A DNA stretch of 64,000 nucleotides from Phyllobates terribilis (GCF_046119375.1 NW_027362764.1:452538001-452602000); one strand, 5' to 3'; positions 39,887 to 64,000 are shown, counted from the stretch's first letter. Notes: generated by a model not told the origin, from the sequence alone. Program-made: numbers and translations.

Positions 39887-39904
39887 CTGTAAAAGAAACA
39901 AACC

Positions 39905-41124: not shown

Positions 41125-43170
41125 ATTATTTTCAGGGCTAGATGCAGCTAAAAATTATTATTAATTTCAAAGCTGGTGGAGCTTGGCATAGATGGCCTAA
41201 TACAATGAGTCCCACACACTGCTAGAAGCCCAAATATTTTTTCAGAGGTAGATGCAGATAAAAATTATTTTTAATTTGCAACCTGATGGAGGTCAGTATA
41301 GATGGACTAATAGAGAAAGTCCCACACACTGCTAGAAGGCCAAATATTTTTTCAGAGCTAGATGCAGATAAAAATTATTTTTCATTTGCAACCTGATGGA
41401 GGTCAGTATAGATGGACTAATACAACAAGTCCCACACACAGCTAGAAGGCCAATATTTTTTCAGAGCTAGATGCAGACAAAAAATTATTTTGAATTTGCA
41501 ACCTGATGGAGGTCAGTATAGATGGACTAATAGAGAAAGTCCCACACACTGCTAGAAGGCCCAATATTTTTTCAGGGGTAGATGCAGAAAAAAATATATT
41601 CAGTTTGCAATCTGATGGAGGTCAGTATAGATGGACTAATACAACAAGTCCCACACACAGCTAGAAGCCCAATATTTTTTCACAGGTAGATGCAGAAAAA
41701 AATATATTCAGTTTGCAACCTGATGGAGGTCTGTATAGATGGATTAATAGAACAAGTCCCACACACAGCTAGAAGCCCAATATTTTTTCAGAGGTAGATG
41801 CAGAAAAAAATATATTCAGTTTGCAACCTGATGGAGGTCTGTATAGATGGATTAATAGAACAAGTCCCACACACAGCTAGAAGCCCAATATTTTTTCAGT
41901 TGTAGGTGCAGAATAAAATATATTCAGTTTGCAACCTGATGGAGGTCTGTATAGATGGATTAATAGAACAAGTCCCACACACAGCTAGAAGCCCAATATT
42001 TTTTCAGAGGTAGATGCAGAAAAAAATATATTCAGTTTGCAACCTGATGGAGGTCAGTATAGATGGACTAATACAACAAGTCCCACACACAGCTAGAAGC
42101 CCAATATTTTTTCAGAGCTAGATGCAGACAAAAAATTATATTCAATTTGCAACCTGATGGAGGTCAGTATAGATGGACTAATAGAGAAAGTTCCACACAC
42201 TGCTAGAAGGCCACATATTTTTTCAGAGGTAGATGCAGAAAAAAATATATTCAGTTTGCAACCTGATGGAGGTCTGTATAGATGGATTAATAGAACAAGT
42301 CCCACACACAGCTAGAAGCCCAATATTTTTTCAGAGGTAGATGCAGAAAAAAATATATTCAGTTTGCAACCTGATGGAGGTCAGTATAGATGGACTAATA
42401 CAACAAGTCCCACACACAGCTAGAAGCCCAATCTTTTTTCAGAGGTAGATGCAGAAAAAAATATATTCAGTTTGCAACCTGATGGAGGTCTGTATAGATG
42501 GATTAATAGAACAAGTCCCACACACAGCTAGAAGCCCAAATATTTTTTCAGAGGTAGATGCAGATAAAAATTATTTTTAATTTGCAACCTGATGGAGGTC
42601 AGTATAGATGGACTAATAGAGAAAGTCCCACACACTGCTAGAAGGCCAAATATTTTTTCAGAGCTAGATGCAGATAAAAATTATATTCAATTTGCAACCT
42701 GATGGAGGTCAGTATAGATGGACTAATAGAACAAGTCCCACACACAGCTAGAAGCCCAAATATTTTTTCAGAGGTACTGTAGATGCAGATAAAAATTATT
42801 TTTAATTTGCAACCTGATGGAGGTCAGTATAGATGGACTAATACAAGTCCCACACACAGCTAGAAGCCTAATATTTTTTCAGAGGTAGATGCAGAAAAAA
42901 ATATATTCAGTTTGCAACCTGATGGAGGTCTGTATAGATGGATTAGTAGAACAAGTCCCACACACAGCTAAAAGCCCAATATTTTTTCAGAGGTAGATGC
43001 AGAAAAAAATATATTCAGTTTGCAACCTGATGGAGGTCAGTATAGATGGACTAATACAACAAGTCCCACACACAGCTAGAAGCCCAATATTTTTTCAGAG
43101 CTAGATGCAGAAAAAAATTATATTCAATTTGCAACCTGATGGAGGTCAGTATAGATGGACTAATAGAATG
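41125..43170 (-). repeat. 110/111-bp satellite array, about 18 monomers, inside hAT copy 1
   Basis: Tandem GCTAGATGCAG...TTGCAACCTGATGGAGGTCAGTATAGATGGACTAATAG...CCCACACAC units; reverse complement of the array at 57350 onward. Confidence 0.97.
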
Positions 43171-44093
43171 ATGCTATGCCCAAAAGATTTTACTTCACTA
43201 GGTGCAGTAAAAAAATTCGTATTCTATACACAGTTGGTATATCTTGCAACACAGATAGGCTACTCCACTGACTAACACACTCTGCAATAGGCCAAAAAGG
43301 ATTAGCTTTGCTAGATTCAGCCAAATGCTGTGAAAAAAACTTGCACAGCACTGGCACAGACCTGCCTGGAAAAAACTGATAGGAACTGATGTAACCTAGT
43401 CCTGAAAAGGACTCCAATTACAATTAGTCTTTACTCCCACAACCTATCTATTTAAGAGCACAGACCTGCCTGATAAAAGTCATAGGAAATGCTGTAACCT
43501 AGTCCTTAAAAGGACTGCAATCACAACTATTCCCTACTCCCAAGCTATCTGTAGATTTGTGCGAAAATTGGCTTGAAATTAACAAGGTATAGTGCACACA
43601 GCAACAGCGGTGCCGTTTAACACGCAGCTGCAGCAGTGAGAAAATGGTGGCGACGGGGAAAATGGCTTGGTCTTATAGTGCAAGGACATGTGACATACAC
43701 TGCCAATGACACATGCCCTTGCTTGTGTGAAAAAAAGCACTTCGCTCCGTGTGTGCGCTGCTGATAGGCTGACAGATTGCACCTCCCCACTGTAAATGCG
43801 GGAAAGAGAAAAAAAAAATGGAGATCTTCATTGTTCCTGCAGAGATTCATCCCCTGCCCCTCCCCCCACCCCGCTGTACACTCAAACTGCGTATTAACAT
43901 TAATTTTCATCATTACTGAGAAAAAATCCAGTTATGATTTTGGTGCACGAACCGTTATCGAACATAACCTCGAACAGCCGAATTTTTCTCAAATTGTTCG
44001 TGTTCGCCGAACGGCTCGAACACCGCCCAAAACAGCTCGAATTTGAGATTGGCGAACAGTTCGAGTAGAACAACGCTCATCTCTAGTAATGAA

Positions 44094-45943
44094 CTTACTT
44101 TGTTCTTGGGGTATATTTTGATTAAGGAAATGGAGGGCAGCTTCACAACCTTTTGTGTGTTGGATATTTGTGTATAGGGATGTTATGTCCATTGTTCCCA
44201 TGATATAGTGGTTCTTCCACGGAATATTATTCAGTAACTGGATAGTGTGTTTGCTATCTTTCAGGTGGGAAGGAAGGTTTGGGACTAGGTCCTGTAGGTG
44301 GTGGTCTACCAGCCTAGAGAGGTTAGCTGTCAGGCATTGTATGCCAGAGATGACTGGTCTCCCTGGTGGGTTATTTTGGTCCTTATGTATTTTGGGTAGG
44401 TGGTAGAAGGCGGCTAGTGTGGGATATTGGATGTTGACATAGTCATATTCGTTTTTGTTAAGGTAACCCTCCTGAAGTCCTTTCTTAGTTAATGTACGTA
44501 GTTCTTCTTGGTAGATGTTCGTTGGATCGGAAGGGATGGTTTGGTAAGTTCTAGAGTCGCCCAGGAGTCTCAATGACTCTTTGTGATAATAGTCTCGATA
44601 GAGGATGACTATACCTCCCCCTTTGTCTGCTGTCCTGATTATTATATTTTTGTTTGTTTGTAATTGTTTCATGGCATTGGTTTCTGATTTTGTGAGGTTA
44701 TTCCTAAATTTTCGGCATTTTTTATTATTTAGACTATGGATGTCATCCGTAACATTTTTTTCAAAGGTGTTGAAGGCCTCTGAGTACTCTTGGAGAGGAT
44801 GAAACATAGATTTATTCTTTCGGTCAGTGTGTGTATATTTAGGTTGGTCTGTTTGGTCTGATATTTTTGTATTGCCTTCTTTCTTGGTGTAGCATTTTTT
44901 TAAAGCCAGTTGGCGCATGAATTTTTGGATACCTATATATGTTTGGAATTTATCCAGTTGTGTCGAGGGAGCATATTTGAGGCCTTTATTCAGTATGGCA
45001 GTTTCATTCTTAGATAATTGGTGTCTACTGAGGTTGAAGATAGATTTTTGGCTGTTTATTTCCTTTGGTTTGCTTTTTTTCTTTTGGGCGAGTTTCCCTC
45101 CCCTAGTGCCTCTTTTACATTTTTTCTTTTGGCCATTTGAAAAAAATCAACATTGCTGGTATGTTTTCGTATTAGTGGGCGCGAGGTAGTGGCTAGAACA
45201 GGGGTTGTTGGTAGTAGGTGGGGGGTGTTTTGGTTTGAGGAGATGGCCTCCTTATTAGGAGTGGTGTGGTTGGTGAGTTATCTGTTTCTTCAGTGGTGGT
45301 TATAAGGGGTAGGAACCTATTCTGTGTGTGGATTGGGGTATCGTGGTCATTTTGTGTTGGGTTGTGTTGTCTTGGGTCTGGTTCGTTTTGGGTTGGGGGG
45401 GATTCAGTGTTGGACGTTGGGTAAATAGAGATGTTGTCGATAGAGGTAATAGAGTTGGTTGGACTTCCGACTACTTCATCCAGGGTCTCAAAGAAGTTTA
45501 ATTGATCCTTCCCCGGTCATTGGTCCGGAAGGGGTACTGCATCTCTGCCAAATTTCGCTCTTTTTCTTTTACTATTTCTGTTTCTTTTTTGGTTGATCCT
45601 GTTCTAGATGCTATTTGTCATGCTCAGGATTTCAGGGTAGTTTTTGTATGGTTTGATTTCATTGAACAGTGCGTTGATTTGCTTTTGTTTTCAGTAGTTG
45701 CTTTTTCCTTTTGCTTATTATGAACTGGACGGTTTGTTTAGAGAATTCATTGAACATAGAGTTCCATTCCTCCAGGGTGGTTGGATCCCCTATGTCTCCT
45801 GATAGTGCCTTAGTCACTACCAAGCCAGATGGTACGATATTAAAGACTAGGTAGTGTTCGAGGGTGGCAACTTCACATAGGTCTCTCATTTCTTTTAGTA
45901 ATAATTGTTCGAGGGTTCTTAGTGAGTCTTTTATTGTTTTCAT
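44094..45943 (-). pseudogene. Penelope ORF, N-terminal half (N-terminal domain plus RT motifs up to SKFIT)
   Basis: TLEHYLVFNIVPSGL; IIRTADKGGGIVI; YHLPKIHK..PPGRPVISG; MDITSLYTNI. Confidence 0.9.
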
Positions 45944-46786
45944 GATTTCAAACTAATACACCTCATATTTCTCCTACTAGGTATACGAACCTCTGTCCCC
46001 CAAACCATCAACTCCATTCGAGTACTTCAAGACCCTGAGGAACTAGAAAGCACATATTTATTTATCTATTTATTTATCTACCAATTTTAATACTTAATTT
46101 TATCTAATTTTATCTATGTATCCAATCCCGTGATATCACTATATATCACTGTTTTAGACTACTCCCAAAATAATATTTTAAGTACTCCACTTGTCTGTAT
46201 CAATAAAAGTTTTTCTTTTTAACAAAAACCTCTCCTGCTTTCTCTCTTCTCACTACCACTAGCGCGAATTTATACTTTTTAACCATAGTTTAACACAATT
46301 CGGACACCCTTGGTTCCCTGTCCACCAATTAGCTGCCATTGCTAGTGACTAGCCTTACAGCACCTCCTTCACCCAATACCATTAAGAGGACAGTTTACTA
46401 CAATGAAATCTACAGCTTATGTTTCAGTTACTTGACAATTATTTTTCTTTCTATAATATAATCTTTGCTATCCTCAAGGCCAGATAGAATCAACATGAAG
46501 ATAACTTTGATGCATACAGATATTCACCTTTACCTTCCTATCAATTTCATTAAAAACTCCATTTTCTCAACATGCAAATACAATATCGCAATATATTAGC
46601 AAGAGCCCAATAGCCTGTAATATACATCACAAACAATGAGAGCCCATATATACACAGATGTGTCCTTTCTTACATTTTCTCTTCTTTGACATATCTGTAA
46701 AAGATATAGCGAATGATGGTCAGCTTAAAAAAATGGGAAAAAAAAGTTTATCATTGTTCTGTTTGCAGATGTTTAAAATACATTAA

Positions 46787-47177
46787 AGGGAACCTGTCAG
46801 AAGGTTTTTGTTATGTAATCTAAGAGAATCATGAAGGAGGGGAAGAGACCCAGATACAAGTGATGTGTCACTTACTGGGCTGTGTTTTGCTGTTTCAATG
46901 CAATCAGTGCTTTATCTTTATCACTACACTGCCTTGTGCCTTGTAGTCCAACCCTGCCCACAGCAATGATTAGCAGCTCTCTGTTACTATACAACATAAA
47001 CAAATTTATACACAGCTCAACAATTGAGATCTGATAGATCTGCAGTAGAGAAAACTGTGACCCTATCATAATTGCTGCACCCAGCAAAGTAAGTGAAACA
47101 TTACTGGAATCAGTGTCTATATTCCTACCTCATACTGCTGTCAGAATACATAGCAAGAACCTGATGACAAATTCCAT
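46787..47177. mobile_element. T2-type (Kolobok) MITE, degenerate
   Basis: TTAA flanks; termini AGGGAACCTGTCA and TGACAAATTCCAT. Confidence 0.7.
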
Positions 47178-47336
47178 TTAAATAAACAAAGCTTTGGTTC
47201 AGTCCAGTTCTTTTTATTCTTAATTAAGCAATTGAATAAAATTAACTAGGTGCTAGTACAAAAATGGTTGACAATAATCACTTCACACCACAAGTATGAA
47301 AATACAAATAAGACTGTTTTTTTAATTTACCATGTA

Positions 47337-48957
47337 CAGTACAGACCAAAAGTTTGGACACACCTTTTCATTTAAATATTTTTCTGTATTTTCATGACTA
47401 TGAAAATTGTACATTCACACTGAAGGCATCAAAACTATGAATTAACACATGTGGAATTATATACTCAACAAAAAAGTGTGAAACAACTGAAAATATGGCT
47501 TATATTCCAGGTTCTTCAAAGTAGCCACCTTTTGCTTTGATGACTGCTTTGCACACTCTTGGCATTCTCTTGATGAGCTTCAAGAGGTAGTCTCCGGAAA
47601 TGGTCTTCCAACAATCTTGAAGGAGTTCCCAGAGATGCTTAGCACTTGTTGGCCCTTTTGCCTTCAGTCTGCGGTCCAGCTTACCCCAAACCATCTCGTT
47701 TGGGTTCAGGTATGGTGACTGTGGAGGCCAAGTCATCTGGCGTAGCACCCCATCACTCTCCTTCTTGGTCAAATAGCCCTTACACAGCCTGTAGGTGTGT
47801 TTGGGGTCATTGTCCTGTTGAAAAATAAATGATGGTCCAACTAAACGCAAACCGGATGGAATAGCATGCCGCTGCAAGATGCTGTGGTAGCCATGCTGGT
47901 TCAGTATGCCTTCAATTTTGAATAAATACCCAACAGTGTCACCAGAAAAGCACCCCCACATCATCACACCTCCATGCTTCACGGTGGGAACCAGGCATGT
48001 AGAGTCCATCCGTTCACCTTTTCTGCATTGCACAAAGACACGATTGGAACCAAAGATCTCAAATTTGGACTCATCAGACCAAAGCACAGATTTCCACTGG
48101 TCTAATGTCCATTCCTTGTGTTCTTTTTCCCAAACAAGTCTCTTCTGCTTGTTGCCTGTCCTTAGCAGTGGTTTCCTAGCAGCTATTTTACCATGAAGGC
48201 CTGCTGCACAAAGTCTCCTCTTGACAGTTGTTGAAGAGATGTGTCTGCTGCTAGAACTCTGTGTGGCATTGACCTGGTCTCTAATCTGAGCTGCTGTTAA
48301 CCTGCGATTTCTGAAGCTGGTGACTCAGATAAACTTATCCTCAGAAGCAGAGGTGACTCTTGGTTTTTCTTTCCTGGGGCGGTCCTCATGTGAGCCAGTT
48401 TCTTTGTAGCGCTTGATGGTTTTTGCAACTGCACTTTGGGACACTTTCAAAGTTTGACCAATTTTTTGGACTGACTGACCTTCATTTCTTAAAGTAATGA
48501 TGGCCACTCGTTTTTCTTTACTTAGCTGCTTTTTTCTTGCCATAATACAAATTCTAACAGTCTATTCAGTAGGACTATCAGCTGTGTATCCACGTGACTT
48601 CTGCACAACACAACTGATGGTCCCAACCCCATTTATAAGGCAAGAAATCCCACTTATTAAACCTGACAGGGCACACCTGTGAAGTGAAAACCATTTCCGG
48701 TGACTACCTCTTTAAGCTCATCAAGAGAATGCCAACAGTGTGCAAAGCAGTCATCAAAGCAAAAGGTGGCTACTTTGAAGAACCTAGAAAATAAGACATA
48801 TTTTCAGTTGTTTCACACTTTTTTGTTAAGTATATAATTCCACATGTGTTAATTCATAGTTTTGATGCCTTCAGTGTGAATGTACAATTTTCAAAGTCAT
48901 GAAAATACAGAAAAATCTTTAAATGAGAAGGTGTGTCCTAACTTTTGGTCTGTAGTG
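47337..48957 (-). mobile_element. Tc1 family A, copy 3
   Basis: TIRs CAGTACAGACC... with TA on both flanks. Confidence 0.95.
47500..48543 (-). pseudogene. Tc1 family A transposase with a nonsense change at 48325 and small in-frame deletions
   Basis: MARKKQLSKE...; WSDESK; FQQDNDPKH; SPYLNPNEM. Confidence 0.9.
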
Positions 48958-49327
48958 TATATTAGTAGATCTATCTACAAAGTCGGTCACAGAAGATAAA
49001 GGAACATTTTAAATGTCAGTACCCATTAACTGCTAATATAGATTAGTTGCTTTATGAAATTTAACAGTTCAAAACATTTTTTAACAAGGTTTAAATATTT
49101 TTTCCATACTTTTTAAAAACTGTAAATTATTTTTAAGTTATCAATCTGCAGAGGAAATAAGCAAAAAGTGAGCTCTAAATCAAATATGTATTTGATGTGA
49201 TTATGCTTTGTCTTCAAAGTCTTTAAAGTACATTTGCACAAAGTCAGGGATTTTTTAGGATTATAGTCAAGTGTAAGAATAACCAGTTATACCAAACAGG
49301 TGATACTAATCATCATTTTCATATGTA

Positions 49328-50956
49328 CAGTGCATTGTGAAAGTATTTGGCCCCCTCAAACTTTTCTACCTTTTGCCAGATTTCTGGCTTCAAACATAAA
49401 GATATAAAATTCTATTTTTTGGGGGAAGACTCAACAACAAGTGGGACATAATCGTGTAGTGGAACAAAATTTATTGGATATTTTAAACTTTTTTAACAAA
49501 TTAAAACCTGAAAAGTGGGGCGTGCAATATTACTCGGCCCCTTTACTTTCAGTGCAGCAAACTCACTCCAGAAGTTCAGTGAGGATCTCTGAATGATCCA
49601 ATGTTGTCCTAAATGACTGGTAATAATAAATAGAATACACCTGTGTGTAATCAAGTCTCCGTATAAATGCACCTGCTCTGTGATAGTCTCAGGGTTCTGT
49701 TTCAAGTGCAGAGAGCATCATGAAGACCAAGGAACACACCAGGCCGGTCCGAGATACTGTTGTGACAAAGTTTAAAGCCGGATTTGGATACAAAAAGATT
49801 TCCCAAGTTTTAAACATCTCAAGGAGCATTGTGCAAGCGATCATATTGAAATGGAAGGAGTATCAGACCACTGTAAATCTACCAAGAACCGGCCGTCCCT
49901 CTAAACTTTCATCTCGAACAAGAAGACTGATCAGAGATGCCGCCAAAAGGCCCATGATCACTCTGGATGAACTGCAGAGATCTACAGCTGAGGTGGGAGA
50001 GTCTGTCCATAGGACAACAATCAGTCATACACTGCACAAATCTGGCCTTTATGAAAGAGTGGCAAGAAGAAAGCCATTTCTCAAAGATATCCATAAAAAG
50101 TGTAATTTGAAGTTTGCCACCAGCCACCTGGGAGACACACCAAACATGTGGAATAAGGTGCTCTGGTCAGATGAAACTAAAATTAAACTTTTTGGCCACA
50201 ATGCAAAATGTTATGTTTGGTGTAAAAGCAACACAGCTTATCACCCTCAAAACACCATCTCCACTGTCAAACATGGTGGTGGCAACATCATGATTTGGGC
50301 CTGCTTTTCTTCAGCAGGGACAGGGAAGATGGTTAAAATTGATGGCAAGATGGACGGAGCCAAATACAGGACCATTCTGGAAGAAAACCTGTTGGAGTCT
50401 GCAAAAGACCTGAGACTGGGATGGAGATTTATCTTCCAACAAGACAATGATCTCAAGCATAAAGCAAAATCTACAATGGAATGGATAAAAAATAAACATA
50501 TCCAGGTGTTAGAATGGCCAAGTCAAAGTCCAGACCTGAATCCAAACGAGAATCTGTGGAAAGAGCTGAAAACTGCTGTTCAAAAACGCCCTCCATCCAA
50601 CCTCAATGAACTCGAGCTGTTATGCAAGAAAGAATGGGCAATAATTTCATCCTCTCGATGTGCAAAACTGATAGAGACATACCCCAAGCGACTTGCAGCT
50701 GTAATCACAGCAAAAGGTGGCGCTACAAAGTATTAACTCAAGGGGGCCAAATAATATTGCACGTCCCACTTTTCAGTTTTTAATTTGTTAAAAAAGTTTA
50801 AAATATCCAATAAATTTCATTCTACTTCATGATTGTGTCCCACTTGTTGTTGATTCTTCCCAAAAAAATTAGAATTTTATATCTTTATGTTTGAAGCCAG
50901 AAATGTGGCAAAAGTTAGAAAAGTTCGAGGGGGCCAAATACTTTCACAATGCACTG
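49328..50956 (+). mobile_element. Passport-like Tc1 transposon, full length (1629 bp)
   Basis: ~213-bp IR/DR-type TIRs CAGTGCATTGTGAAAGTATTTGGCCCC with TA TSD on both sides. Confidence 0.96.
49720..50736 (+). CDS. Tc1 DD34E transposase, 338 aa, open frame (Passport-like)
   Basis: MKTKEH...GRPSKL...WSDETK...FQQDND...SPDLNPNENLW...KGGATKY; 34 residues between the second D and the E, counted by hand. Confidence 0.93.
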   Translation: MKTKEHTRPVRDTVVTKFKAGFGYKKISQVLNISRSIVQAIILKWKEYQTTVNLPRTGRPSKLSSRTRRLIRDAAKRPMITLDELQRSTAEVGESVHRTTISHTLHKSGLYERVARRKPFLKDIHKKCNLKFATSHLGDTPNMWNKVLWSDETKIKLFGHNAKCYVWCKSNTAYHPQNTISTVKHGGGNIMIWACFSSAGTGKMVKIDGKMDGAKYRTILEENLLESAKDLRLGWRFIFQQDNDLKHKAKSTMEWIKNKHIQVLEWPSQSPDLNPNENLWKELKTAVQKRPPSNLNELELLCKKEWAIISSSRCAKLIETYPKRLAAVITAKGGATKY

Positions 50957-51049
50957 TAGGTTGGAGGAGGCTTAAAACTGGGTGCAAAACTCTGCTACAA
51001 AGATGAGACTGTGAAACACAGTTTCATATCCAAGGTCACACACCACGCC

Positions 51050-51620
51050 AACAAGTGTTCTTCATTGAAGCCTCACTATCGACATGGAAACAGGGCCCAG
51101 AAACTCAGTTATGCACAAATACCTATGAACTAAGGTGTAGCAATTGTAGCAGGTGCTCTGAACTGGATACAATAATGAATGTCTGCAGCCAACAGTGAAG
51201 CATGGTGGTGGTACCTTGAAAGTACGGTGCTGCATATAAGCAAATGCAGTTGGATCAATAATTTCCACAGTTCAGAGAAATACAGGCAGATACTAATCCA
51301 TCATGTAATATTATGAGGCAGGTGTCTTATTGGCTCCAAATGTATTCTGCCACAGGACAACGAAAAGCAATTGTAATTAATAACTATTGACAGACTAAAG
51401 TGGAAAAAGGAGTCCTGGAAATGATTACATGGCTCTCAAAGAGCCCTGATCTCAACATCATTAAGTCTGTCTGGAATTTCATGAAGAGACAGAAGGATTT
51501 GTGCAAGCCTACAAGCAGACCTGTGGCTAGTTCTCCAAAATCTTTGGGAAAAACTCCTTACCGTGTTCATTCAAAAACTGTTTGCAATTGTACATAGAAT
51601 TGATGCTTTTTTAACCCAAA
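51050..51620 (+). mobile_element. Highly degraded Tc1 transposase fragment
   Basis: Plus-strand remnants encoding TVKHGGG and WLSKSPDLNIIKSVW. Confidence 0.65.
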
Positions 51621-52574
51621 AACATTTTCTGGCAGCCCTCTAGAGAACGAATTGTGTAGCTGTGAGACATTCAACCTGCCACTCTATTTTGTTAGAATGA
51701 TGAAAAATGTACCATTTCGCCGATTGGTGGGGTTCCCAGATGTCGTACGCACACAGAGCAATACGTTTTCATTTTTTTTGCAGATAGTTGATATTTAACT
51801 GATCAATTGAGTATCTTTAATTATTGTTGGGAGGCCTGAATTTATTCTTGAATTTTGTATTTATACTGGCATTTGTTTGGTTTGTTGAGTCCATAGTTAC
51901 TGTGTGGTCTATCTTCTGGGGTCTTTTCTAAGGAATGTATTTTTTGAGGAACAGCATTTATTCAGAGGTCTTCTCTGGTGTCCGACTTTCTTTTAGGATT
52001 TCGTCTGAATCTTTATTTAGGAGCTTCATCTGAGTCAATATTTATTCACAGGCTCGTTGTTCTATAATAAATTACAATGCATTCTGCTCTGAGGTCTTTA
52101 TCTTAGAGTCTGGCTTCGGGTTTATAAATGTTGCGATGTGATTAAGGATATATACATGGAATTTAAACTCAATAGGTTAGCAGTGTTTGGTGGCATACCT
52201 GTGTAAGTGATTGGCAAATATTACAAACATTATGTAAAATGCTAATGACACTTATTGGAATCTCAGAATTTCATGTCACCTTTCAAAACTAATTCTCCAC
52301 ATAAAAAGGATTTCTGTACTTAGATACTCTTACCCTAGTTATAGACAAATTATTGTGGTACCAGACTTTCTTGTAGTCTTATAAGGTAAGTAAACCCTGT
52401 ATTTCACTAAAAAGTAACCCTTTCCTTTATGTAGACTAGCAATCATCTTTCCATTAAAAAGGGATCTCTAAGAACCAGATAAAATAGTGTCCCTGATATA
52501 ATTCAAACTATAACCAATCCTAGTCGCATGTCACTACCGGTTGCAGATTGAATACATACAACTCCAAAGACCTA

Positions 52575-52855
52575 TTGTGGGAAAAATAAGTATTTGATAC
52601 ACTGATGATTTTGCAAGTTTTTCCACCTACAAAGAATGGAGAGGTCTGTAATTTTTATTGTGTGTACACGTCAACTGTAAGAGACAGAATCTAAAAATAA
52701 AAAACAGAAAATCACATTGTATGATTATGTAAATAATTAAATTGCAGTTTATTACATGAACAAGTCATATAATCATCTACCAACCAGCAAGAATTCTGGC
52801 TATCACAGATCTGTTAGTTTTTCTATAAGAAGCCCTCCTACTCTGCACTCATTAC
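52575..52855 (+). mobile_element. Tc1 left-end fragment cut by the hAT insertion at 52856
   Basis: Tc1-type terminus GTGGGAAAAATAAGTATTTGATAC; sequence stops at CTCATTAC. Confidence 0.55.
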
Positions 52856-53769
52856 TAGACATGAGCGGTGTTCGACTCAAACTGCTCGCCAATCTCAAAT
52901 TCGAGCTGTTTTGGGCGGTGTTCGAGCTGTTCGGCGAACACGAACAATTTGAAAAAAATTTGGCTGTTCGAGATTATGCTCGATAACTGTTCGTGCACCA
53001 AAATCATAACTGGATTTTTCTCAGTAATACTGAAAATTAATGTTAATACGCAGTTTGAGTGTTCAGCAGGGCAGGGGGAGGGGCAGGGGATGGATCTCTG
53101 CATAAATAATGAAGATTTCCATTTTTTTTTCTCTTTCCCGCATTTACAGTGGGGAGGTGCAATCTGTCAGCCTATCAGCAGCGCACACACGGAGCGAACT
53201 GCTTTTTTTCACACAAGCAAGGGCATGTGTCATTGGCAGTGTATGTCACATGTCCTTGCCCTATAAGACCCAGCCATTTTCCACATAGCCACCATTTTCT
53301 CACTGCTGCAGCTGCGTGTTAGACGCCACCGCTGTTGCTGTGTGCGCTATACTTTGAGTGTTAATTTCCAGCCAATTTTCGCACAAATCTACAGATAGCT
53401 TCGGAGTAGGGAACAGTTGTGATTGCAGTCCTTTTGAGGACTAGGTTACATCATTTCCTATGACTTTTATCAGGCAGGTCTGTGCTCTTAAATAGATAGG
53501 TTGGGAGTAAAGACTAATTGTAATTGCAGTCTTTTTGAGGGCTAGGTTACATCAGTTCCTATCACTTTTTGCCAGGCAGGTCTGTGTCAGTGCTGGGCAA
53601 GTTTTTTTTCACAGCATTTGGCTAAATCTAGCTTAGCAAATCCTTTTTGGCCTCTTTAAGTGTGTGTTAGTCAGTGGAGTAGCCTATCTGTGTTGCAAGC
53701 TACACCACCTGTGCATAGAATACAAATTATTTTACTGCACCTAGCCAAGTAAAACCTTTTGGGCATAGC

Positions 53770-54285
53770 ATCATTCTATTAGTCCATCTAAACTAACCTC
53801 GATCAGGTTTCAAATTCAAAATAATTTTTATCTGCATCTAGCTCTGAAAAAATATTTGGGCTTGAAGCAGTGTGTGGGACTTGTTCTATTAGTCCATCTA
53901 TACTAACCTCCACCAGGTTGCAAATTCAAAATAATTTTTATCTGCATCTAGCTCTGAAAAAATATTTTGGCTTGTAGCAGTGTGTGGGAATTGTTCTATT
54001 AGTCCATCTATAGTAACCTCCACCAGGTTGCAAATTCAAAATAATTTTTATCTGCATCTAGCTCTGAAAAAATATTTGGGCTTGTAACATTGTGTGGGAT
54101 TTGTTCTATTAGTCCATCTATACTAACCTCCACCAGGTTGCAAATTCAAAATAATTTTTATCTGCATCTAGCTCTGAAAAAATATTTGGGCTTGTAGCAG
54201 TGTGTGGTACTCATTGTATTAGGCCATCTATACCAAGCTCCACAAGCTTTGAAATTAATAATAATTTTTAGCTGCATCTAGCCCG
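53770..54285 (+). repeat. 110/111-bp satellite, about 5 monomers, inside hAT copy 2
   Basis: Same monomer as 41125-43170. Confidence 0.93.
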
Positions 54286-54294
54286 GAAAATAAT

Positions 54295-56330
54295 TTTTCT
54301 TCCCAATAGTAGTAGCAATAGAAATATGGGGCGCACGCCTGGCTAACAAAAATATACGCTTCATAACAAAAAACACCAGCCTAGCGCATTGCATTAATAA
54401 GATGGCATCATCGTCTCTCCCAGTGATAGGCCTACTACGCCGGCTAGCATTACTGTGCCTAAAACACAATGTATGGGTCCGAGCTAGCCACGATGCTGAG
54501 GGGTCTAACGCTGCTGCTAACGCTTTATCACAATTCAATTGGCAGATTGTCACAGAGCTCCTCCCCAACGCCCACCCATCGGGCAACAGTTGCCCACCCT
54601 CCCTATGGGATCTAGTGGCGAATAGTTGATGCCATTAATCAGAGCGTCAGTTGCCCCGTCGACGTGGCAAGCATACGGTAAGGCATGGGAAGAGTGGACA
54701 CGACTAGTAGCAGGCAGACGGGTTGACCAAGCCAGATTACAAGTCACCATAGAATTTCTCCACCCGCTAATGATGAGGGGCATATCAGGGGCGTCAGCGC
54801 AGCGGTGTCTGACCGGAGTAGCATTTCACTTTCAACTACTGAATTGGGGAGATGTGACAAAGTCACTAAAACTGATTTCTCGCATCATATCCCTAACACC
54901 ATTAACATGACACTCACAATTTGAAGCAACACTACTGTCTACTGCATTTGAGATCGCCTTCTTCGGGGCGCTATGCATAAGCGAATTAGTCCCTCAATCC
55001 AAAATTACCACCAGTGGAGGCTTATTACACCAGGACGTAGTCATAGCCAATAATGCAATACGTCTACGCATACGCAAATCGAAAACGGTTCCAGCGGGCA
55101 GGGGCACTTGGGTACTTCTACAACCCACAAACGGTACACTGAGTCAGGTAACAATAGTAAAAACATATATAACCATAAGATCACAAAGTAATTTCTTCCT
55201 ATCACACATTGATGGAACGCCATTATCAAGATACCAGTTCCAAGCTATATTTAATAAATGCCTAACATCGGCAGGTAACCACCCCAAAGATTACGGGACA
55301 CACTCATTCCGCATAGGCGCGGCCATGGAAGCAGCAAGAGCAGGACTGTCAGAAACGGAAGTTCAGAGGATAGGGAGATGGCGATCCACGTGTTTGGCGA
55401 GATGCATAAGACCGGACTTGTTATCCTAACGTGGTTTGTTTCTTTTACAGGTGACACTAACCCAACAGTGTGGGTGATAGGCCACTCGTAAATATATTGG
55501 GCAGAAAAAAGGGAGAAAGTCCGCTCAGGCGGGAGGAAAATAGAGTTTCATAACACATATTTCAACTGGAGAGGTATTAGAGGCCTGCTATGGCCACAGG
55601 TACTAATGGAGGTAATCAAGGTAGGGAGAGAGGCAAGAGGTCCAGTCATCTTAGTTATACAGGCAGGGGGAAATGACCTAGGTCATCACAAGAGCGCATA
55701 ACTAATGGCAATAATGAAACTAGACACTGAGCGCTTCAGAGAATTTTTCACAAAACTAACTATAGTATGGTCAGAGATTGTGCCGACAGCGGTATGGCAA
55801 GGTGCGCGAGACATCACGGCCATCGAACGGACAAGGCGGGTAATAAATATTCGGATGGCAAAATTTAGAAGAGACAGAGGCGGTGTAGTGATACAACACC
55901 GACAACTGGAAGGAGATAAAGCAGGCCTCATACGGCCCGACGGTGTTCACTTAATGGATATTGGACTGGACATATTCCTGTCAGGATCCAGGATGGAGTG
56001 GAAGAAGCGATAAGAGTGATGGATGGGGGTCAGAGTCCTGCATACGAGTATGCAGGATCCTCCGTGGCCTGGAAATAGAAAGGACATGTTGGAGAGTTAC
56101 ACTTGTTGGCCAACTTGTCGGTGTGGAGACCCAGGGCATGCTGCAACAAGCTGAATTAATTTAGAATTAAAATGCCTTTCTAATGCAATGAGTATAAAGA
56201 GTTAATAAAGCTGTGACCGATCCTCACCCATCCAGTTGTAAGAGTTACATTATTGTATTGTCAAGGAAAGGGAGGCGGTAGGAGGGCTGAGCGTCTGGGT
56301 TTGGTTGGGGTTCCCCACAGTCTGCCTAGG
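54295..56330 (+). mobile_element. Second copy of the Ngaro-like cargo (RNase H, YR with an internal deletion, SGNH)
   Basis: Same satellite/RNase H junction as copy 1; HSFRIGAA near 55300; GHS/GGN/DGVH. Confidence 0.88.
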
Positions 56331-56544
56331 CTAGATGCATTTAAAAATTCTTATTAGATACACAGGCGGTGCAGCTTGCTTCGCAGCTGAGCTACTGCGC
56401 CCAAAGCATTGCCTAAGCTAGATGCAGTTAAAAATTCTACGCTGACTAGCAGACACTGAAGCTTTGGAGCAGACCTCTGAGTAAACAGCTCTTCAGACTC
56501 AACCATCTGTGTTACCCCAAGCCATAGTGTATGTAGGTTCTTAC

Positions 56545-59500
56545 TAGAGATGAGCGTTGTTCGACTCGAACTGTTCGCCAATCTCAAATTCGAGCTGTTT
56601 TGGGCGGTGTTCGAGCCGTTCGGCGAACACGAACGATTTGAGAAAAATTCGGCTGTTCGAGGTTCTGTTCGATAACTGTTCGTGCACCAAAATCATAACT
56701 GGATTTTTTCTCAGTAATGATGAAAATTAATGTTAATACGCAGTTTGAGTGTACAGTGGGGCGGGGGGAGGGGCAGGGGATGGATCTCTGTAGGAATAAT
56801 GAAGATCTCCATTTTTTTTCTCTTTCCCGCATTTACAGTGGGGAGGTGCAATCTGTCAGCCTATCAGCAGCGCACACACGGAGCGAAGTGCTTTTTTTCA
56901 CACAAGCAAGGGCATGTGTCATTGGCAGTGTATGTCACATGTCCTTGCCCTATAAGACCAAGCCATTTTCCCAGTCGCCACCATTTTCTCACTGCTGCAG
57001 CTGCGTGTTAGACGGCACCGCTGTTGCTGTGTGCGCTATACCTTGTTAATTTCAAGCCAATTTTCGCACAAATCTACAGATAGCTTGGGAGTAGGGAATA
57101 GTTGTGATTGCAGTCCTTTTAAGGACTGGGTTACAGCATTTCCTATGACTTTTACCAGGCAGGTCTGTGCCAGTGCTGTGCAAGTTTTTTTCACAGCATT
57201 TGGCTGAATCTAGCAAAGCTAATCCTTTTTGGCCTATTGCAGAGTGTGTTAGTCAGTGGAGTAGCCTATCTGTGTTGCAAGATATACCACCTCTGTATAG
57301 AATACCAATTTTTTTACTGCACCTAGTGAAGTAAAATCTTTTGGGCATAGCATCATTCTATTAGTCCATGTATACTGACCTCCATCAGGTTGCAAATTGA
57401 ATATAATTTTTTTCTGCATCTAGCTCTGAAAAAATATTTGGGCTTCTAGCAGTGTGTGGGACTTGTTCTATTAGTCCATCTATACTGACCTCCATCAGGT
57501 TGCAAACTGAATATAATTTTTTTCTGCATCTAGCTCTGAAAAAATATTTGGCCTTCTGGCAGTGTGTGGGACTTGTTCTATTAGTCCATCTATACTGACC
57601 TCCATCACGTTGCAAATTCAAAATAATTTTTTGTCTGCATCTTGCTCTGAAAAAATATTTGGCCTTCTAGCAGTGTGTGGGACTTTCTCTATTAGTCCAT
57701 CAATACTGACCTCCATCAGGTTGCAAATTAAAAATATTTTTTTGTCTGCATCTAGCTCTGAAAAAATATTTGGCCTTCTAGCAGTGTGTGGGACTTTCTC
57801 TATTAGTCCATCTATACTGACCTCCATCAGGTTGCAAATGAAAAATAATTTTTTGTCTGCATCTAGCTCTGAAAAAATATTTGGCCTTCTAGCAGTGTGT
57901 GGGACTTTCTCTATTAGTCCATCTATACTGACCTCCATCAGGTTGCAAACTGAATATATTTTTTTTCTGCATCTACCTCTGAAAAAATATTTGGGCTTCT
58001 AGCAGTCTGTGGGACTTGTTCTATTAGTCCATCTATACTGACCTCCATTAGGTTGCAAATTGAAAATAATTTTTAACTGCATCTACCTCTGAAAAAATAT
58101 TTGGGCTTCTAGCTGTGTGTGGGACTTGTTCTATTAGTCCATCTATACTGACCTCCATCAGGTTGCAAACTGAATATAATTTTTTCTGCATTTAGCTCTG
58201 AAAAAATATTTGGCCTTCTAGCAGTGTGTGGGACTTTCTCTATTAGTCCATCTATACTGACCTACATCAGGTTGCAAATTGAATATAATTTTTTGTCTGC
58301 ATCTAGCTCTGAAAAAATATTTGGCCTTCTAGCAGTGTGTGGGACTTTCTCTATTAGTCCATCTATACTGACCTCCATCAGGTTGCAAACTGAATATATT
58401 TTTTTTCTGCATCTACCTCACAAAAAATATTTGGGCTTCAAGCTGTGTGTGGGACTTGTTCTATTAGTCCATCTATGCTGACCTCCATAAGGTTGCAAAC
58501 TGAATATAATTTTTTTCTGCATCTACCTCTGAAAAAATATTTGGGCTTCTAGCTGTGTGTGGGACTTGTTCTATTAGTCCATCTATACTGACCTACATCA
58601 GGTTGCAAACTGAATATAATTTTTTTCTGCATCTAGCTCTGAAAAAATATTTGGCCTTCTAGCAGTGTGTGGAACTTGTTCTATTAGTCCACTTATACTG
58701 ACCTCCATCAGGTTACAAATTCTAAATAATTTTTTGTCTGCATCTAGCTCTGAAAAAATATTTGGCCTTCTAGCAGTGTGTGGGACTTTCTCTATTAGTC
58801 CATCTATACTGACCTCCATCAGGTTGCAAATTGAATATAATTTTTTTCTGCATCTAGCTCTGAAAAAATATTTGGCCTTCTGGCAGTGTGTGGGACTTGT
58901 TCTATTAGTCCATCTATACTGACCTCCATCACGTTGCAAATTCAAAATAATTTTTTGTCTGCATCTTGCTCTGAAAAAATATTTGGCCTTCTAGCAGTGT
59001 GTGGGACTTTCTCTATTAGTCCATCAATACTGACCTCCATCAGGTTGCAAATTAAAAATATTTTTTTGTCTGCATCTAGCTCTGAAAAAATATTTGGCCT
59101 TCTAGCAGTGTGTGGGACTTTCTCTATTAGTCCATCTATACTGACCTCCATCAGGTTGCAAACTGAATATATATTTTTTCTGCATCTACCTCTGAAAAAA
59201 TATTTGGGCTTCTAGCTGTGTGTGGGACTTTTTCTATTAGTCCATCTATACTGACCTCCATCAGGTTGCAAACTGAATATAATTTTTTTCTGCATCTAGC
59301 TCTGAAAAAATATTTGGCCTTCTAGCAGTGTGTGGGACTTGTTCTATTAGTCCACCTATACTGACCTCCATCAGGTTGCAAATTCAAAATAACTTTTTGT
59401 CTGCATCTAGCTCTGAAAAAATATTTGGCCTTCTAGCAGTGTGTGGGACTTTCTCTATTAGTCCATCTATACTGACCTCCATCAGGTTGCAAATTGAATA

Positions 59501-62500
59501 TAATATTTTTCTGCATCTAGCTCTGAAAAAATATTTGGGCTTCCAGCAGTGTGTGGGACTTGTTCTTTTAGTCCATCTATACTGACCTCCATCAGGTTGC
59601 AAACTGGATATAATTTTTTTCTGCATCTAGCTCTGAAAAAATATTTGGCCTTCTAGCAGTGTGTGGGATTTGTTCTATTAGTCCATCTATACTGACCTCC
59701 ATCACGTTGCAAATTCAAAATAATTTTTTGTCTGCATCTAGCTCTGAAAAAATATTTAGCCTTCTAGCAGTGTGTGGGACTTTCTCTATTAGTCCATCTA
59801 TACTGACCTCCATCAGGTTGCAAATTAAAAATAATTTTTATCTGCATTTAGCTCTGAAAAAATATTTGGGCTTCTAGCTGTATGTGGGACTTGTTCTATT
59901 AGTCCATCTATACTGACCTCCATCAGGTTGCAAATTAAAAATAATTTTTATCTGCATCTAGCTCTGAAAAAATATTTGGCCTTCTAGCAGTGTGTGGGAC
60001 TTGTTCTATTAGTCCACCTATACTGACCTCCATCACGTTGCAAATTCAAAATAATTTTTTGACTGCATCTAGCTCTGAAAAAATGTTTGGCCTTCTAGCA
60101 GTGTGTGGGACTTTCTCTATTAGTCCATCTATACAGACCTCCATCAGGTTGCAAATTAAAAATAATTTTTATCTGCATCTACCTCTGAAAAAATATTTGG
60201 GCTTCTAGCTGTGTGTGGGACTTGTTCTATTAGTCCATCTATACTGACCTCCATCAGGTTGCAAACTGAATATAATTTTTTTTTGCATCTAGCTCTGAAA
60301 ATATATTTGGCCTTCTAGCAGTGTGTGTGACTTTCTCTATTAGTCCATCTATACTGACCTCCATCAGGTTGCAAATTAAAAATAATTTTTATCTGCATCT
60401 TGCTCTGTTAAAATATTTGGCCTTTTAGCAGTGTGTGGGACTTTCTCTATTAGTCCATCTGTACTGACCTCCATAAGGTTGCAAATTAAAAATAATTTTT
60501 ATCTGCATCTAGCTCTGAAAAAATATTTGACCTTCTAGCAGTGTGTGGAACTTTCTCTATTAGTCCATCTATACTGACCTCCATCAGGTTGCAAATTAAA
60601 AATATTTCTTTGTCTGCGTGTAGCTCTGAAAAAACATTTGGCCTTCTAGCAGTGTGTGGGACTTTCTCTATTAGTCCATCTATACTGACCTCCATCAGGT
60701 TGCAAACTGAATATATTTTTTTTCTGCATCTACCTCTGAAAAAATATTTGGGCTTCTAGCTGTGTGTGGGACTTGTTCTACTAGTCCATCTATACAGACC
60801 TCCATCAGGTTGCAAACTGAATATCATTTTTTTCTGCATCTAGCTCTGAAAAAATATTTGGCCTTCTAGCTGTGTGTGGGACTTGTTCTATTAGTCCGTC
60901 TATACTGACCTCCATCACGTTGCAAATTCAAAATAATTTTTTGTCTGCATCCAGCTCTGAAAAAATATTTGGCCTTCTAGCAGTGTGTGGGACTTTCTCT
61001 ATTAGTCCATCTATACTGACCTCCATCAGGTTGCAAATGAAAAATATTTTTTTGTCTGCATGTAGCTCTGAAAAAATATTTGGCCTTCTAGCAGTGTGTG
61101 GGACTTTCTCTATTAGTCCATCTATACTGACCTCCATCAGGTTGCAAACTGAATATATTTTTTTTCTGCATCTACCTCTGAAAAAATATTTGGGCTTCTA
61201 GCTGTGTGTGGGACTTGTTCTATTAGTCCATCTATACTGACCTACATCAGGTTGCAAACTGAATATAATTTTTTTCTGCATCTAGCTCTGAAAAAATATT
61301 TGGCCTTCTAGCAGTGTGTGGGACTTTCTCTATTAGTCCATCTATACTGACCTCCATCAGGTTGCAAATTGAATATAATTTTTTTCTGCATCTAGCTCTG
61401 AAAAAAAATGTGGGCTTATAGCAGTGTGTGGGACTTGTTCTATTAGTCCATCTATACTGACCTCCATCACGTTGCAAATTCAAAATAATTTTTTGTCTGC
61501 ATCTTGCTCTGAAAAAATATTTGACCTTCTAGCAGTGTGTGGGACTTTCTCTATTAGTCCATCAATACTGACCTCCATCAGGTTGCAAATTAAAAATATT
61601 TTTTTGTCTGCATCTAGCTCTGAAAAAATATTTGGCCTTCTGGCAGTGTGTGGGACTTGTTCTATTAGTCCATCTATACTGACCTCCATCACGTTGCAAA
61701 TTCAAAATAATTTTTTGTCTGCATCTTGCTCTGAAAAAATATTTGGCCTTCTAGCAGTGTGTGGGACTTTCTCTATTAGTCCATCAATACTGACCTCCAT
61801 CAGGTTGCAAATTAAAAATATTTTTTTGTCTGCATCTAGCTCTGAAAAAATATTTGGCCTTCTAGCAGTGTGTGGGACTTTCTCTATTAGTCCATCTATA
61901 CTGACCTCCATCAGGTTGCAAACTGAATATATATTTTTTCTGCATCTACCTCTGAAAAAATATTTGGGCTTCTAGCTGTGTGTGGGACTTTTTCTATTAG
62001 TCCATCTATACTGACCTCCATCAGGTTGCAAACTGAATATAATTTTTTTCTGCATCTAGCTCTGAAAAAATATTTGGCCTTCTAGCAGTGTGTGGGACTT
62101 GTTCTATTAGTCCACCTATACTGACCTCCATCAGGTTGCAAATTCAAAATAACTTTTTGTCTGCATCTAGCTCTGAAAAAATATTTGGCCTTCTAGCAGT
62201 GTGTGGGACTTTCTCTATTAGTCCATCTATACTGACCTCCATCAGGTTGCAAACTGGATATAATTTTTTTCTGCATCTAGCTCTGAAAAAATATTTGGCC
62301 TTCTAGCAGTGTGTGGGACTTTCTCTATTAGTCCATCTATACAGACCTCCATCAGGTTGCAAATTAAAAATAATTTTTATCTGCATCTACCTCTGAAAAA
62401 ATATTTGGGCTTCTAGCTGTGTGTGGGACTTGTTCTATTAGTCCATCTATACTGACCTCCATCAGGTTGCAAACTGAATATAATTTTTTTTTGCATCTAG

Positions 62501-64000
62501 CTCTGAAAATATATTTGGCCTTCTAGCAGTGTGTGTGACTTTCTCTATTAGTCCATCTATACTGACCTCCATCAGGTTGCAAATTAAAAATAATTTTTAT
62601 CTGCATCTTGCTCTGTTAAAATATTTGGCCTTCTAGCAGTGTGTGGGACTTTCTCTATTAGTCCATCTGTACTGACCTCCATAAGGTTGCAAATTAAAAA
62701 TAATTTTTATCTGCATCTAGCACTGAAAAAATATTTGACCTTCTAGCAGTGTGTGGAACTTTCTCTATTAGTCCATCTATACTGACCTCCATCAGGTTGC
62801 AAATTAAAAATATTTCTTTGTCTGCGTGTAGCTCTGAAAAAATATTTGGCCTTCTAGCAGTGTGTGGGACTTTCTCTATTAGTCCATCTATACTGACCTC
62901 CATCAGGTTGCAAACTGAATATATTTTTTTTCTGCATCTACCTCTGAAAAAATATTTGGGCTTCTAGCTGTGTGTGGGACTTGTTCTACTAGTCCATCTA
63001 TACAGACCTCCATCAGGTTGCAAACTGAATATCATTTTTTTCTGCATCTAGCTCTGAAAAAATATTTGGCCTTCTAGCTGTGTGTGGGACTTGTTCTATT
63101 AGTCCGTCTATACTGACCTCCATCACGTTGCAAATTCAAAATAATTTTTTGTCTGCATCCAGCTCTGAAAAAATATTTGGCCTTCTAGCAGTGTGTGGGA
63201 CTTTCTCTATTAGTCCATCTATACTGACCTCCATCAGGTTGCAAATGAAAAATATTTTTTTGTCTGCATGTAGCTCTGAAAAAATATTTGGCCTTCTAGC
63301 AGTGTGTGGGACTTTCTCTATTAGTCCATCTATACTGACCTCCATCAGGTTGCAAACTGAATATATTTTTTTTCTGCATCTACCTCTGAAAAAATATTTG
63401 GGCTTCTAGCTGTGTGTGGGACTTGTTCTACTAGTCCATCTATACAGACCTCCATCAGGTTGCAAACTGAATATCATTTTTTTCTGCATCTAGCTCTGAA
63501 AAAATATTTGGCCTTCTAGCTGTGTGTGGGACTTGTTCTATTAGTCCGTCTATACTGACCTCCATCACGTTGCAAATTCAAAATAATTTTTTGTCTGCAT
63601 CCAGCTCTGAAAAAATATTTGGCCTTCTAGCAGTGTGTGGGACTTTCTCTATTAGTCCATCTATACTGACCTCCATCAGGTTGCAAATGAAAAATAATTT
63701 TTTGTCTGCATCTAGCTCTGAAAAAATATTTGGCCTTCTAGCAGTGTGTGGGACTTTCTCTATTAGTCCATCTATACTGACCTCCATCAGGTTGCAAACT
63801 GAATATATTTTTTTTCTGCATCTACCTCTGAAAAAATATTTGGGCTTCTAGCAGTCTGTGGGACTTGTTCTATTAGTCCATCTATACTGACCTTCATTAG
63901 GTTGCAAATTGAAAATAATTTTTAACTGCATCTACCTCTGAAAAAATATTTGGGCTTCTAGCTGTGTGTGGGACTTGTTCTATTAGTCCATCTATACTGA
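56545..64000 (-). mobile_element. hAT family 1, copy 3, inserted into copy 2; runs off the window
   Basis: TIR TAGAGATGAGCG after GTTCTTAC; the equivalent site in copy 1 (near 38790) is empty. Confidence 0.9.
57350..64000 (+). repeat. Expanded 110/111-bp satellite array, at least 60 monomers, extending past the window end
   Basis: Monomer TGCATCTAGCTCTGAAAAAATATTTGGCCTTCTAGCAGTGTGTGGGACTTTCTCTATTAGTCCATCTATACTGACCTCCATCAGGTTGCAAA...; recurring ORF starts are spaced in multiples of about 110.4 bp. Confidence 0.98.

What the first reader, a model, noticed from the sequence alone, without database searches (positions are those of the whole stretch)
41125..64000. Satellite expansion within a transposon: about 5, 18 and at least 60 monomers in three copies of one hAT
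Seen: the same 110/111-bp monomer occupies the same position, about 0.8-0.9 kb inside the TAGAGATGAGC end, in all three copies: ~0.5 kb (53770), ~2.0 kb (41125) and at least 6.6 kb (57350 to the window end). Edge monomers are degenerate. Inferred: the hAT seeds satellite arrays at new loci, and copy 3 has expanded towards a stand-alone satellite block, possibly at a heterochromatin boundary.
Basis: partly seen in the sequence, partly recalled or inferred. Interest (0 to 1): 0.78.

Follow-up and report, generated by a model that had tools for sequence, protein, structure and literature searches.

The report
Frog hAT transposon carrying expanding satellite
Three copies of one poison-frog "cut-and-paste" (hAT) transposon, one of them inserted inside another, carry the same 110-base tandem repeat at the same internal spot with 5, 19 and at least 60 units; this is a clear local example of a known way that mobile elements spread and grow satellite DNA.

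Summary
Three arrays of one 110-bp unit lie at 41129-43168 (18 units plus a degenerate end unit), 53774-54298 (4+1) and 57357 to the window end (at least 60). All sit in the same register, 0.8-0.9 kb inside a TAGAGATGAGC terminus.

The carrier is a real hAT. Copy A (33178-44089) has a perfect 8-bp target duplication, a related second terminus, GTTCG-rich subtermini and a decayed transposase homologous to Hermes and to dendrobatid frog hAT proteins.

Copy B is the oldest: its arms are 7% diverged from A and C, while A and C differ by 2%. Copy B's similarity to A stops exactly where copy C's terminus begins. Copy C is therefore most simply a nested insertion into B.

Units cluster by array. Array C contains stretches of up to 797 nt, nearly identical, at offsets of 4, 20 and 25 units, which points to recent block duplication.

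"The hAT seeds arrays at new loci" is supported. "Stand-alone block" and "heterochromatin boundary" cannot be tested, because the window ends inside the array.

This scan has already noted the same 110-bp hAT-borne satellite on other DNA of this genome (for example s1-196784, s1-224838). Frog precedents exist (Xstir, miDNA4, FEDoR). My verdict is a new member of a known kind, of modest interest.

The parts
33170..33177 (.). Target-site duplication of copy A, left copy (GTAATGAA)
   Evidence: Read directly. It is identical to 44090-44097.
33178..33290 (+). Copy A, transposase-side terminus: TIR TAGTGTTGAGCC plus a GTTCG/CGAAC-rich subterminal region
   Evidence: The TIR matches TAGAGATGAGCG at 9 of 12 positions. 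Ten GTTCG/CGAAC pentamers lie in 33209-33279, against a window mean of 0.2 per 200 bp.
35627..38395 (+). Decayed hAT transposase of copy A (frame changes 2>1>2; in-frame stop at 37844-37846)
   Evidence: ORF 36683-37846 matches the Hermes transposase at E 4e-6. It is 83% identical to a Ranitomeya variabilis protein and 70% to an Anomaloglossus protein that carries PF05699. tblastn maps BED-side to hATC-side residues across 35627-38395.
38792..41128 (-). Copy A, inner non-coding arm between the transposase and the array; shared with copy B
   Evidence: 95.5% identical to 54299-56544.
41129..43168 (-). Array A: 18 full units of 108-111 bp plus one degenerate 85-nt end unit (at the 41.1 kb side)
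43169..44089 (-). Copy A, terminus-proximal arm with TIR TAGAGATGAGCG (44078-44089 region) and a 104-bp two-unit repeat (43354-43542)
44090..44097 (.). Target-site duplication of copy A, right copy (GTAATGAA on the + strand)
52856..53773 (+). Copy B, terminus (TAGACATGAGCG) and proximal arm; the 8 bp outside are CTCATTAC
   Evidence: Arm K2P distance is 0.071 to A and 0.070 to C.
53774..54298 (+). Array B: 4 full units plus the same degenerate end unit as in A
54299..56544 (+). Copy B, inner arm, cut off by copy C; its last 8 bp (56537-56544, GTTCTTAC) are the likely target site of C
   Evidence: Similarity to A ends exactly at 56544, which corresponds to 38792 in A. A contig of a related organism runs on from 56544 into the sequence that follows 38792 in copy A.
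56545..57356 (+). Copy C, terminus (TAGAGATGAGCG) and proximal arm (one 104-bp unit fewer)
   Evidence: K2P distance to A is 0.021.
57357..64000 (+). Array C: at least 60 units, runs off the window, contains near-identical multi-unit blocks
   Evidence: Ungapped stretches with at most 2 mismatches: 797 nt (60426-61222 = 62634-63430), 658 nt and 584 nt.

Best explanation
A family of hAT DNA transposons in a dendrobatid-type frog carries a 110-bp tandem array as part of its non-coding region. In copy A the array lies about 2.7 kb downstream of the transposase and 0.9 kb inside one terminus.

Each transposition places a short array at a new site. The array then changes length locally by ordinary tandem-repeat mechanisms: unequal exchange, replication slippage, or break repair through repeats.

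The window holds three insertions. B is the oldest, with 5 units. A has 19 units. C has at least 60 units and inserted into B's inner arm.

Shown here: the element's identity, the conserved junctions, the relative ages, the clustering of units by array, and the recent block duplications in C. Inferred: the molecular mechanism of expansion, and that the block duplications happened at the present locus.
For: The carrier is a hAT.
- Copy A has a perfect 8-bp duplication, GTAATGAA, on both sides of 33178-44089.
- 36 of the window's 69 GTTCG/CGAAC pentamers lie in the four subterminal regions.
- The transposase relic matches Hermes at E 4e-6 and frog hAT proteins carrying PF05699.
- The three outer 8-mers (GTAATGAA, CTCATTAC, GTTCTTAC) all fit the hAT target consensus nTnnnnAn. 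The sequences were read directly; the consensus comes from established knowledge of hobo, Hermes and Ac.

The array is cargo of the element.
- The arm/array junctions are identical in all copies.
- No units occur outside the three copies in this window.

Relative ages are consistent.
- Arm K2P distance is 0.021 for A-C and 0.07 for B against either.
- This fits C being nested in B.
- A contig of a related organism shows the uninterrupted form past 56544.

The arrays changed locally.
- 75 of 82 units have their nearest neighbour in the same array. With shuffled labels the mean is 47.6 and the maximum 63.
- Array C has 797-, 658- and 584-nt stretches with at most 2 mismatches at offsets of 20, 25 and 4 units. 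The mean identity between units is 92%.

Contigs of two other organisms hold both arms and units.
Against: - Copy C's far end, its second terminus and the second GTTCTTAC are outside the window, so nesting is inferred, not seen.
- No genome-wide count of arrays with and without hAT flanks could be made.
- Some contigs join units to sequences not found in this window (loose ends at 54297, 53950 and 57422). These could be arrays in other contexts.
- Related hAT copies fetched from Ranitomeya and Anomaloglossus lack the array, but both are truncated just after the transposase, so they say nothing either way.
- Array lengths rest on one assembly.
Confidence: 0.85

Rival explanations
1. An old, independent satellite was captured once by the hAT. 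Most genomic arrays of the unit are stand-alone and owe nothing to the element, so the hAT copies are passengers of the satellite's history and not its seeders.
For: Summed contig word depth is highest over the units in all four runs. A few contigs join units to sequences absent from the window.
Against: All three arrays in the window sit in hAT copies, with identical junctions on both sides. This includes the oldest copy. High unit depth is expected anyway when each element holds many units, and the tool warns that depth is not copy number. Other notes of this scan also describe the unit inside hAT copies, but I did not check them.
Confidence: 0.08
2. Copies B and C are a head-to-tail tandem pair, or B is a 3.7-kb deletion derivative that ends at 56544 and C happened to land beside it. 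On this reading C is not nested inside a longer B.
For: B's last base abuts C's first base. At first sight no inverted terminus is visible at B's right end.
Against: B's right end has no terminal repeat and no GTTCG cluster. In copy A, and in a contig of a related organism, the same sequence continues uninterrupted into the transposase side. The 8 bp before C fit the hAT target consensus. B is older than C.
Confidence: 0.1
3. The differences in unit number are contractions from a long ancestral array, or an assembly artefact, and not expansions.
For: Copy B, the oldest, has the fewest units, and loss cannot be excluded there. Only contig-level read data were available.
Against: Array C holds multi-unit blocks at 99.7% identity or more, much younger than the 2% A-C arm divergence. 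Array A also has identical or near-identical unit pairs (A08=A11, A07/A13/A14). These are signatures of duplication.
Confidence: 0.07

Closest known systems
miDNA4 (Tc1/mariner MITE with a satellite motif, Xenopus tropicalis) and Xstir/Xmix (Xenopus laevis)
   Same: A frog DNA transposon carries a tandem-repeat motif between its inverted termini. Unit number varies between copies, and the element spreads arrays. This is as summarised in PMC9659126 and PMC12054243.
   Different: Those are small non-autonomous MITEs of other superfamilies. Here the carrier is a roughly 11-kb hAT with a transposase relic, and the unit is 110 bp.
[quoted passage not shown]
   Same: A frog non-coding element of about 3.5 kb with internal tandem arrays, inverted repeats and target duplications, and a short hAT-like flank.
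   Different: FEDoR has four arrays built on 22/47-bp motifs, paired forward and reverse inverted repeats and no coding relative. It is not the same element.
Central tandem repeats of DINE-1/DINE-TR1 and CgHINE Helentrons (Drosophila, oyster)
   Same: Arrays sit at a fixed internal position of a mobile element. They are dispersed by transposition and are sometimes expanded into satellite blocks (PMC9659126).
   Different: Those are rolling-circle elements without target duplications. This element has an 8-bp duplication and hAT termini.
Other hAT copies with the 110-bp array noted by this scan in the same genome (s1-196784, s1-224838, s1-224837, s1-237574)
   Same: The notes describe the same unit length and the same kind of carrier, with unit numbers from about 9 to about 150.
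   Different: Several of those notes place the array upstream of the transposase. In copy A here it lies downstream, and no unit lies on the other side. I did not see their sequences.

Membership tests
hAT superfamily DNA transposon | 8-bp target-site duplication | tested here: met
   GTAATGAA at 33170-33177 and 44090-44097 flanks copy A. The far ends of B and C are outside the window.
hAT superfamily DNA transposon | Short terminal inverted repeats with subterminal repeated motifs | tested here: met
   TAGTGTTGAGCC and TAGAGATGAGCG match at 9 of 12 positions. GTTCG/CGAAC clusters lie at all four visible termini.
hAT superfamily DNA transposon | Transposase of the hAT type (Hermes-like catalytic core, C-terminal hAT dimerisation domain) | tested here: met
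   Hermes match at E 4e-6. The region 37103-38395 is 69% identical to a 438-aa protein carrying PF05699. Pfam itself gave no hit on the window's ORF pieces.
hAT superfamily DNA transposon | Target preference nTnnnnAn | tested here: met
   GTAATGAA, CTCATTAC and GTTCTTAC all have T at position 2 and A at position 7. The consensus itself is from established knowledge.
Autonomous (active) element | Uninterrupted transposase reading frame | tested here: not met
   In-frame stop at 37844-37846 and at least two frame changes between 35627 and 36650.
Transposon-borne satellite (MITE/DINE-type central repeats) | Same array, same internal position and same junctions in independently inserted copies, with variable unit number | tested here: met
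Satellite DNA in the strict sense | Long stand-alone arrays, high abundance, heterochromatic location | not testable with these tools
   Array C is at least 6.6 kb but runs off the window. Contig depth is not a copy number. No cytological data are available.
Helitron/Helentron | 5'-TC and 3'-CTRR ends with a 3' hairpin, no target duplication | tested here: not met
   The termini were read directly. An 8-bp duplication and hAT termini were found instead.
FEDoR | Four internal arrays built on a 22/47-bp motif, paired inverted repeats of 91 and 49 bp | tested here: not met
   The element here has one 110-bp array and one 104-bp two-unit repeat.

The most novel reading that the evidence does not exclude
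This hAT family may be a main generator of satellite blocks in a giant poison-frog genome. On this reading, array growth is coupled to the element's own activity, for example repair synthesis through the array after excision. Copies such as C would then be caught on the way to becoming multi-10-kb heterochromatic satellites. Self-nesting and local hopping would concentrate arrays in particular regions.
Probability: 0.1. Interest if true: 0.6.

Novelty: new member of a known kind. Interest (0 to 1): 0.3.

Why it matters
The window offers a small natural experiment. One old and two young copies of the same element lie within 31 kb, with 5, 19 and at least 60 units. This shows that array size does not track copy age, and that growth proceeds by recent multi-unit block duplication.

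Together with the other copies noted in this genome, the family could be used to measure how fast transposon-borne arrays grow and how much they add to the very large dendrobatid genomes. The principle itself (transposons seeding satellites) is well established, including in frogs.

Tried and rejected
- Helitron or rolling-circle reading. B and C abut head to tail, and the shared region's inner end has no inverted terminus. I dropped this once the partner terminus and the 8-bp duplication of copy A were read at 33178.
- Identity with FEDoR of Rana temporaria: rejected because the repeat units differ.
- Rfam: no family anywhere in the window.
- Units elsewhere in the window: none.
- Tyrosine-recombinase fragment in the shared inner arm. 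I found only one sub-threshold Pfam hit (Phage_int_SAM_1, E 0.01, 16.5 bits against a cutoff of 22.3) on ORF 40490-40795. The PDB search gave nothing, and the homologous ORFs of copy B gave nothing. I do not rely on it.
- Age of the association, from related copies in Anomaloglossus (L001) and Ranitomeya (L002). Both share only the transposase region and stop before the arm, so they give no answer.
- Literature. I found no paper on dendrobatid satellites in the library, and the Dendrobates tinctorius genome paper does not mention satellites.
- BLAST self-comparison of array C returned nothing usable. I replaced it with a direct offset scan.

Full report
**Observation**

Tandem Repeats Finder reports three arrays of one unit:
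- 41129-43168: period 108, 18.7 copies, reverse-complement orientation.
- 53774-54298: period 110, 4.8 copies.
- 57357-64000: period 110, 60.2 copies, cut by the window end.

Cutting the arrays in register against the consensus gives 18 full units plus one 85-nt degenerate unit in A, 4+1 in B and at least 60 in C. The window contains no N. No unit of this satellite occurs outside these three places.

**The three copies**

A self-comparison shows one element present three times:
- Copy A spans 38792-44089 on the minus strand.
- Copy B spans 52852-56544 on the plus strand.
- Copy C spans 56541 to the window end on the plus strand.

The terminus TAGAGATGAGC is at 44075-44085 (minus) and 56545 (plus). 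It occurs with one mismatch at 52856.

A three-way alignment of the terminus-proximal arm shows the same arm/array junction in all copies. The arms are 917, 918 and 812 bp long. C is shorter because it has one unit, not two, of a second 104-bp repeat.

The opposite junction, including a diverged last unit, is the same in A and B. About 35 nt before the first unit look like a decayed partial unit. Support for this is weak: the score is 33, against a shuffle mean of 16 and a maximum of 32.

**What the carrier is**

The inner end of the A/B shared region has no inverted terminus, and B abuts C head to tail. This first suggested a rolling-circle element.

- At 33178 the sequence reads TAGTGTTGAGCC, a 9 of 12 match to TAGAGATGAGCG.
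- The 8 bp outside both ends are the same, GTAATGAA (33170-33177 and 44090-44097).
- The pentamers GTTCG/CGAAC occur 69 times in the window. 36 of them lie within about 150 bp of the four visible termini.

Between the ends, ORF 36683-37846 matches the Hermes transposase at E 4e-6. It also matches hAT proteins of frogs: 83% identity to Ranitomeya variabilis and 70% to an Anomaloglossus protein that carries the hAT dimerisation domain PF05699. Further hits are in R. imitator and Phyllobates.

tblastn maps the coding relic to 35627-38395 on the plus strand. It has two frame changes and an in-frame stop at 37844-37846.

Copy A is therefore a dead, once-autonomous hAT of 10.9 kb in a dendrobatid-type frog. 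The array lies about 2.7 kb downstream of the transposase and 0.9 kb inside the terminus.

**B and C**

B's similarity to A stops at 56544, which corresponds to 38792 in A. That is exactly one base before C's terminus. In A the sequence continues past this point toward the transposase.

Laying contigs of four public runs on 52700-58600 showed a contig of a related organism that runs from 56544 into AGTTAAAAGGGG.... That is the sequence following 38792 in copy A. Sequences preceding 56545 in other contigs disagree with each other (agreement 0.52-0.65), as expected for a mobile-element end.

The 8 bp before C (GTTCTTAC), before B (CTCATTAC) and around A (GTAATGAA) all fit the hAT target pattern nTnnnnAn. 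That pattern comes from established knowledge of hobo, Hermes and Ac.

Arm divergence (K2P) is 0.021 for A-C and 0.070-0.071 for B against either. The inner arm A-B distance is 0.046.

An older B hosting a younger C is the simplest reading. I give it about 85-90%. C's far end is not in the window.

**Array dynamics**

- Mean identity between units is 92% within A and within C, 94% within B, 90% between A and C, and 87-88% between B and the others.
- 75 of 82 units have their nearest neighbour in their own array. With shuffled labels the mean is 47.6 and the maximum 63 in 2000 trials.
- The first unit (A01-C01, 0.97) and the penultimate unit (A18-B04, 0.94) still pair across copies. Change has therefore been internal.
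- Array C contains ungapped stretches with at most 2 mismatches of 797 nt (offset 20 units), 658 nt (25 units), 584 nt (4 units) and 414 nt (53 units). The last of these runs into the window end.
- These blocks are about 99.7% identical, younger than the 2% A-C arm divergence. C therefore grew by recent multi-unit duplications.
- Array A has identical or near-identical unit pairs (A08=A11; A07, A13, A14) but no long blocks. B has neither.

Array size does not follow copy age.

**Mechanism**

Shown here: the array is part of the transposed unit, and the unit number changed after the copies separated.

Inferred: growth by unequal exchange, slippage, or break repair through repeats. Repair synthesis after hAT excision is a possible extra source of length change. 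I could not test it.

**Other species and RNA**

Contigs from two other coded organisms hold arms and units, many at 99% identity or more. Runs guessed to be RNA also hold them. This does not prove transcription.

Summed word depth is highest over the units and is higher over the terminus-proximal arm than over the inner arm. This hints at many shorter derivatives. The tool warns that this depth is not a copy number.

Related copies fetched from Anomaloglossus (L001, with a TAGAGTAGAGCG terminus at 6969) and Ranitomeya (L002) share only the transposase region. They end before the arm, so they do not date the association.

**Comparison with what is known**

Transposon-borne arrays that expand are well documented. 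Examples are Xstir/Xmix and miDNA4 in Xenopus, DINE-TR1 in Drosophila and CgHINE in oyster (review PMC9659126), and FEDoR in Rana temporaria (PMC12054243). FEDoR is a different element (22/47-bp motifs).

I found no paper on dendrobatid satellites.

This scan has already reported the same 110-bp hAT-borne array on other DNA of this genome, with about 9 to about 150 units. Several of those notes place the array upstream of the transposase. In copy A it is downstream, and there is none on the other side. I could not compare sequences.

**Verdict**

The reading "a hAT seeds arrays that then expand" is supported. The readings "stand-alone block" and "heterochromatin boundary" are untested.

This is a new member of a known kind. 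Its local interest lies in the self-nested pair and in the clear, recent block duplications.

Noticed in passing
window 1-3451 and 25817-27788: A 30-32-bp satellite (3.3 kb and 1.9 kb), each with an adjoining 23-bp mini-array, is present twice in inverted orientation about 22 kb apart. It could be two copies, or the two ends, of another repeat-carrying element.
   Followed up: partly
window 15079-19377 (+): A second, different hAT transposase relic (31-75% identity to frog hAT proteins), split by other insertions.
   Followed up: partly
window 49720-50736 (+); 28758-29615 (-); 47500-48087 (-): Tc1/mariner transposase ORFs. The 338-aa one has HTH and DDE_3 domains and looks uninterrupted. It lies between hAT copies A and B.
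   Followed up: partly
window 38817-38858 / 56478-56519 versus 33940-33976: A roughly 40-bp segment of the hAT inner arm is an inverted copy of a segment in the transposase-upstream region of copy A. Public contigs show the segment in both contexts.
   Followed up: partly
window 53950, 54297 and 57422 (loose ends in read laying): Contigs of related organisms join satellite units to sequences not present in this window (for example ACCCAGCCAATACTTTTGGCC..., GGGGCTCCGAGATGCGCAAG...). These may be deletion derivatives, insertions into arrays, or arrays in another context.
   Followed up: no
window 34347-35491: About 1.1 kb of copy A, upstream of the transposase, has no counterpart in the Anomaloglossus copy (L001 joins 8415/8412). 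It is either an insertion in A or a deletion in L001.
   Followed up: no
window 6381-6606 and 11513-12780: A degenerate interstitial TTAGGG run, and a 13-bp array of about 98 units.
   Followed up: no
window 21608-22888 (-): An ORF with aspartyl protease and reverse transcriptase domains (an LTR-retroelement relic).
   Followed up: no
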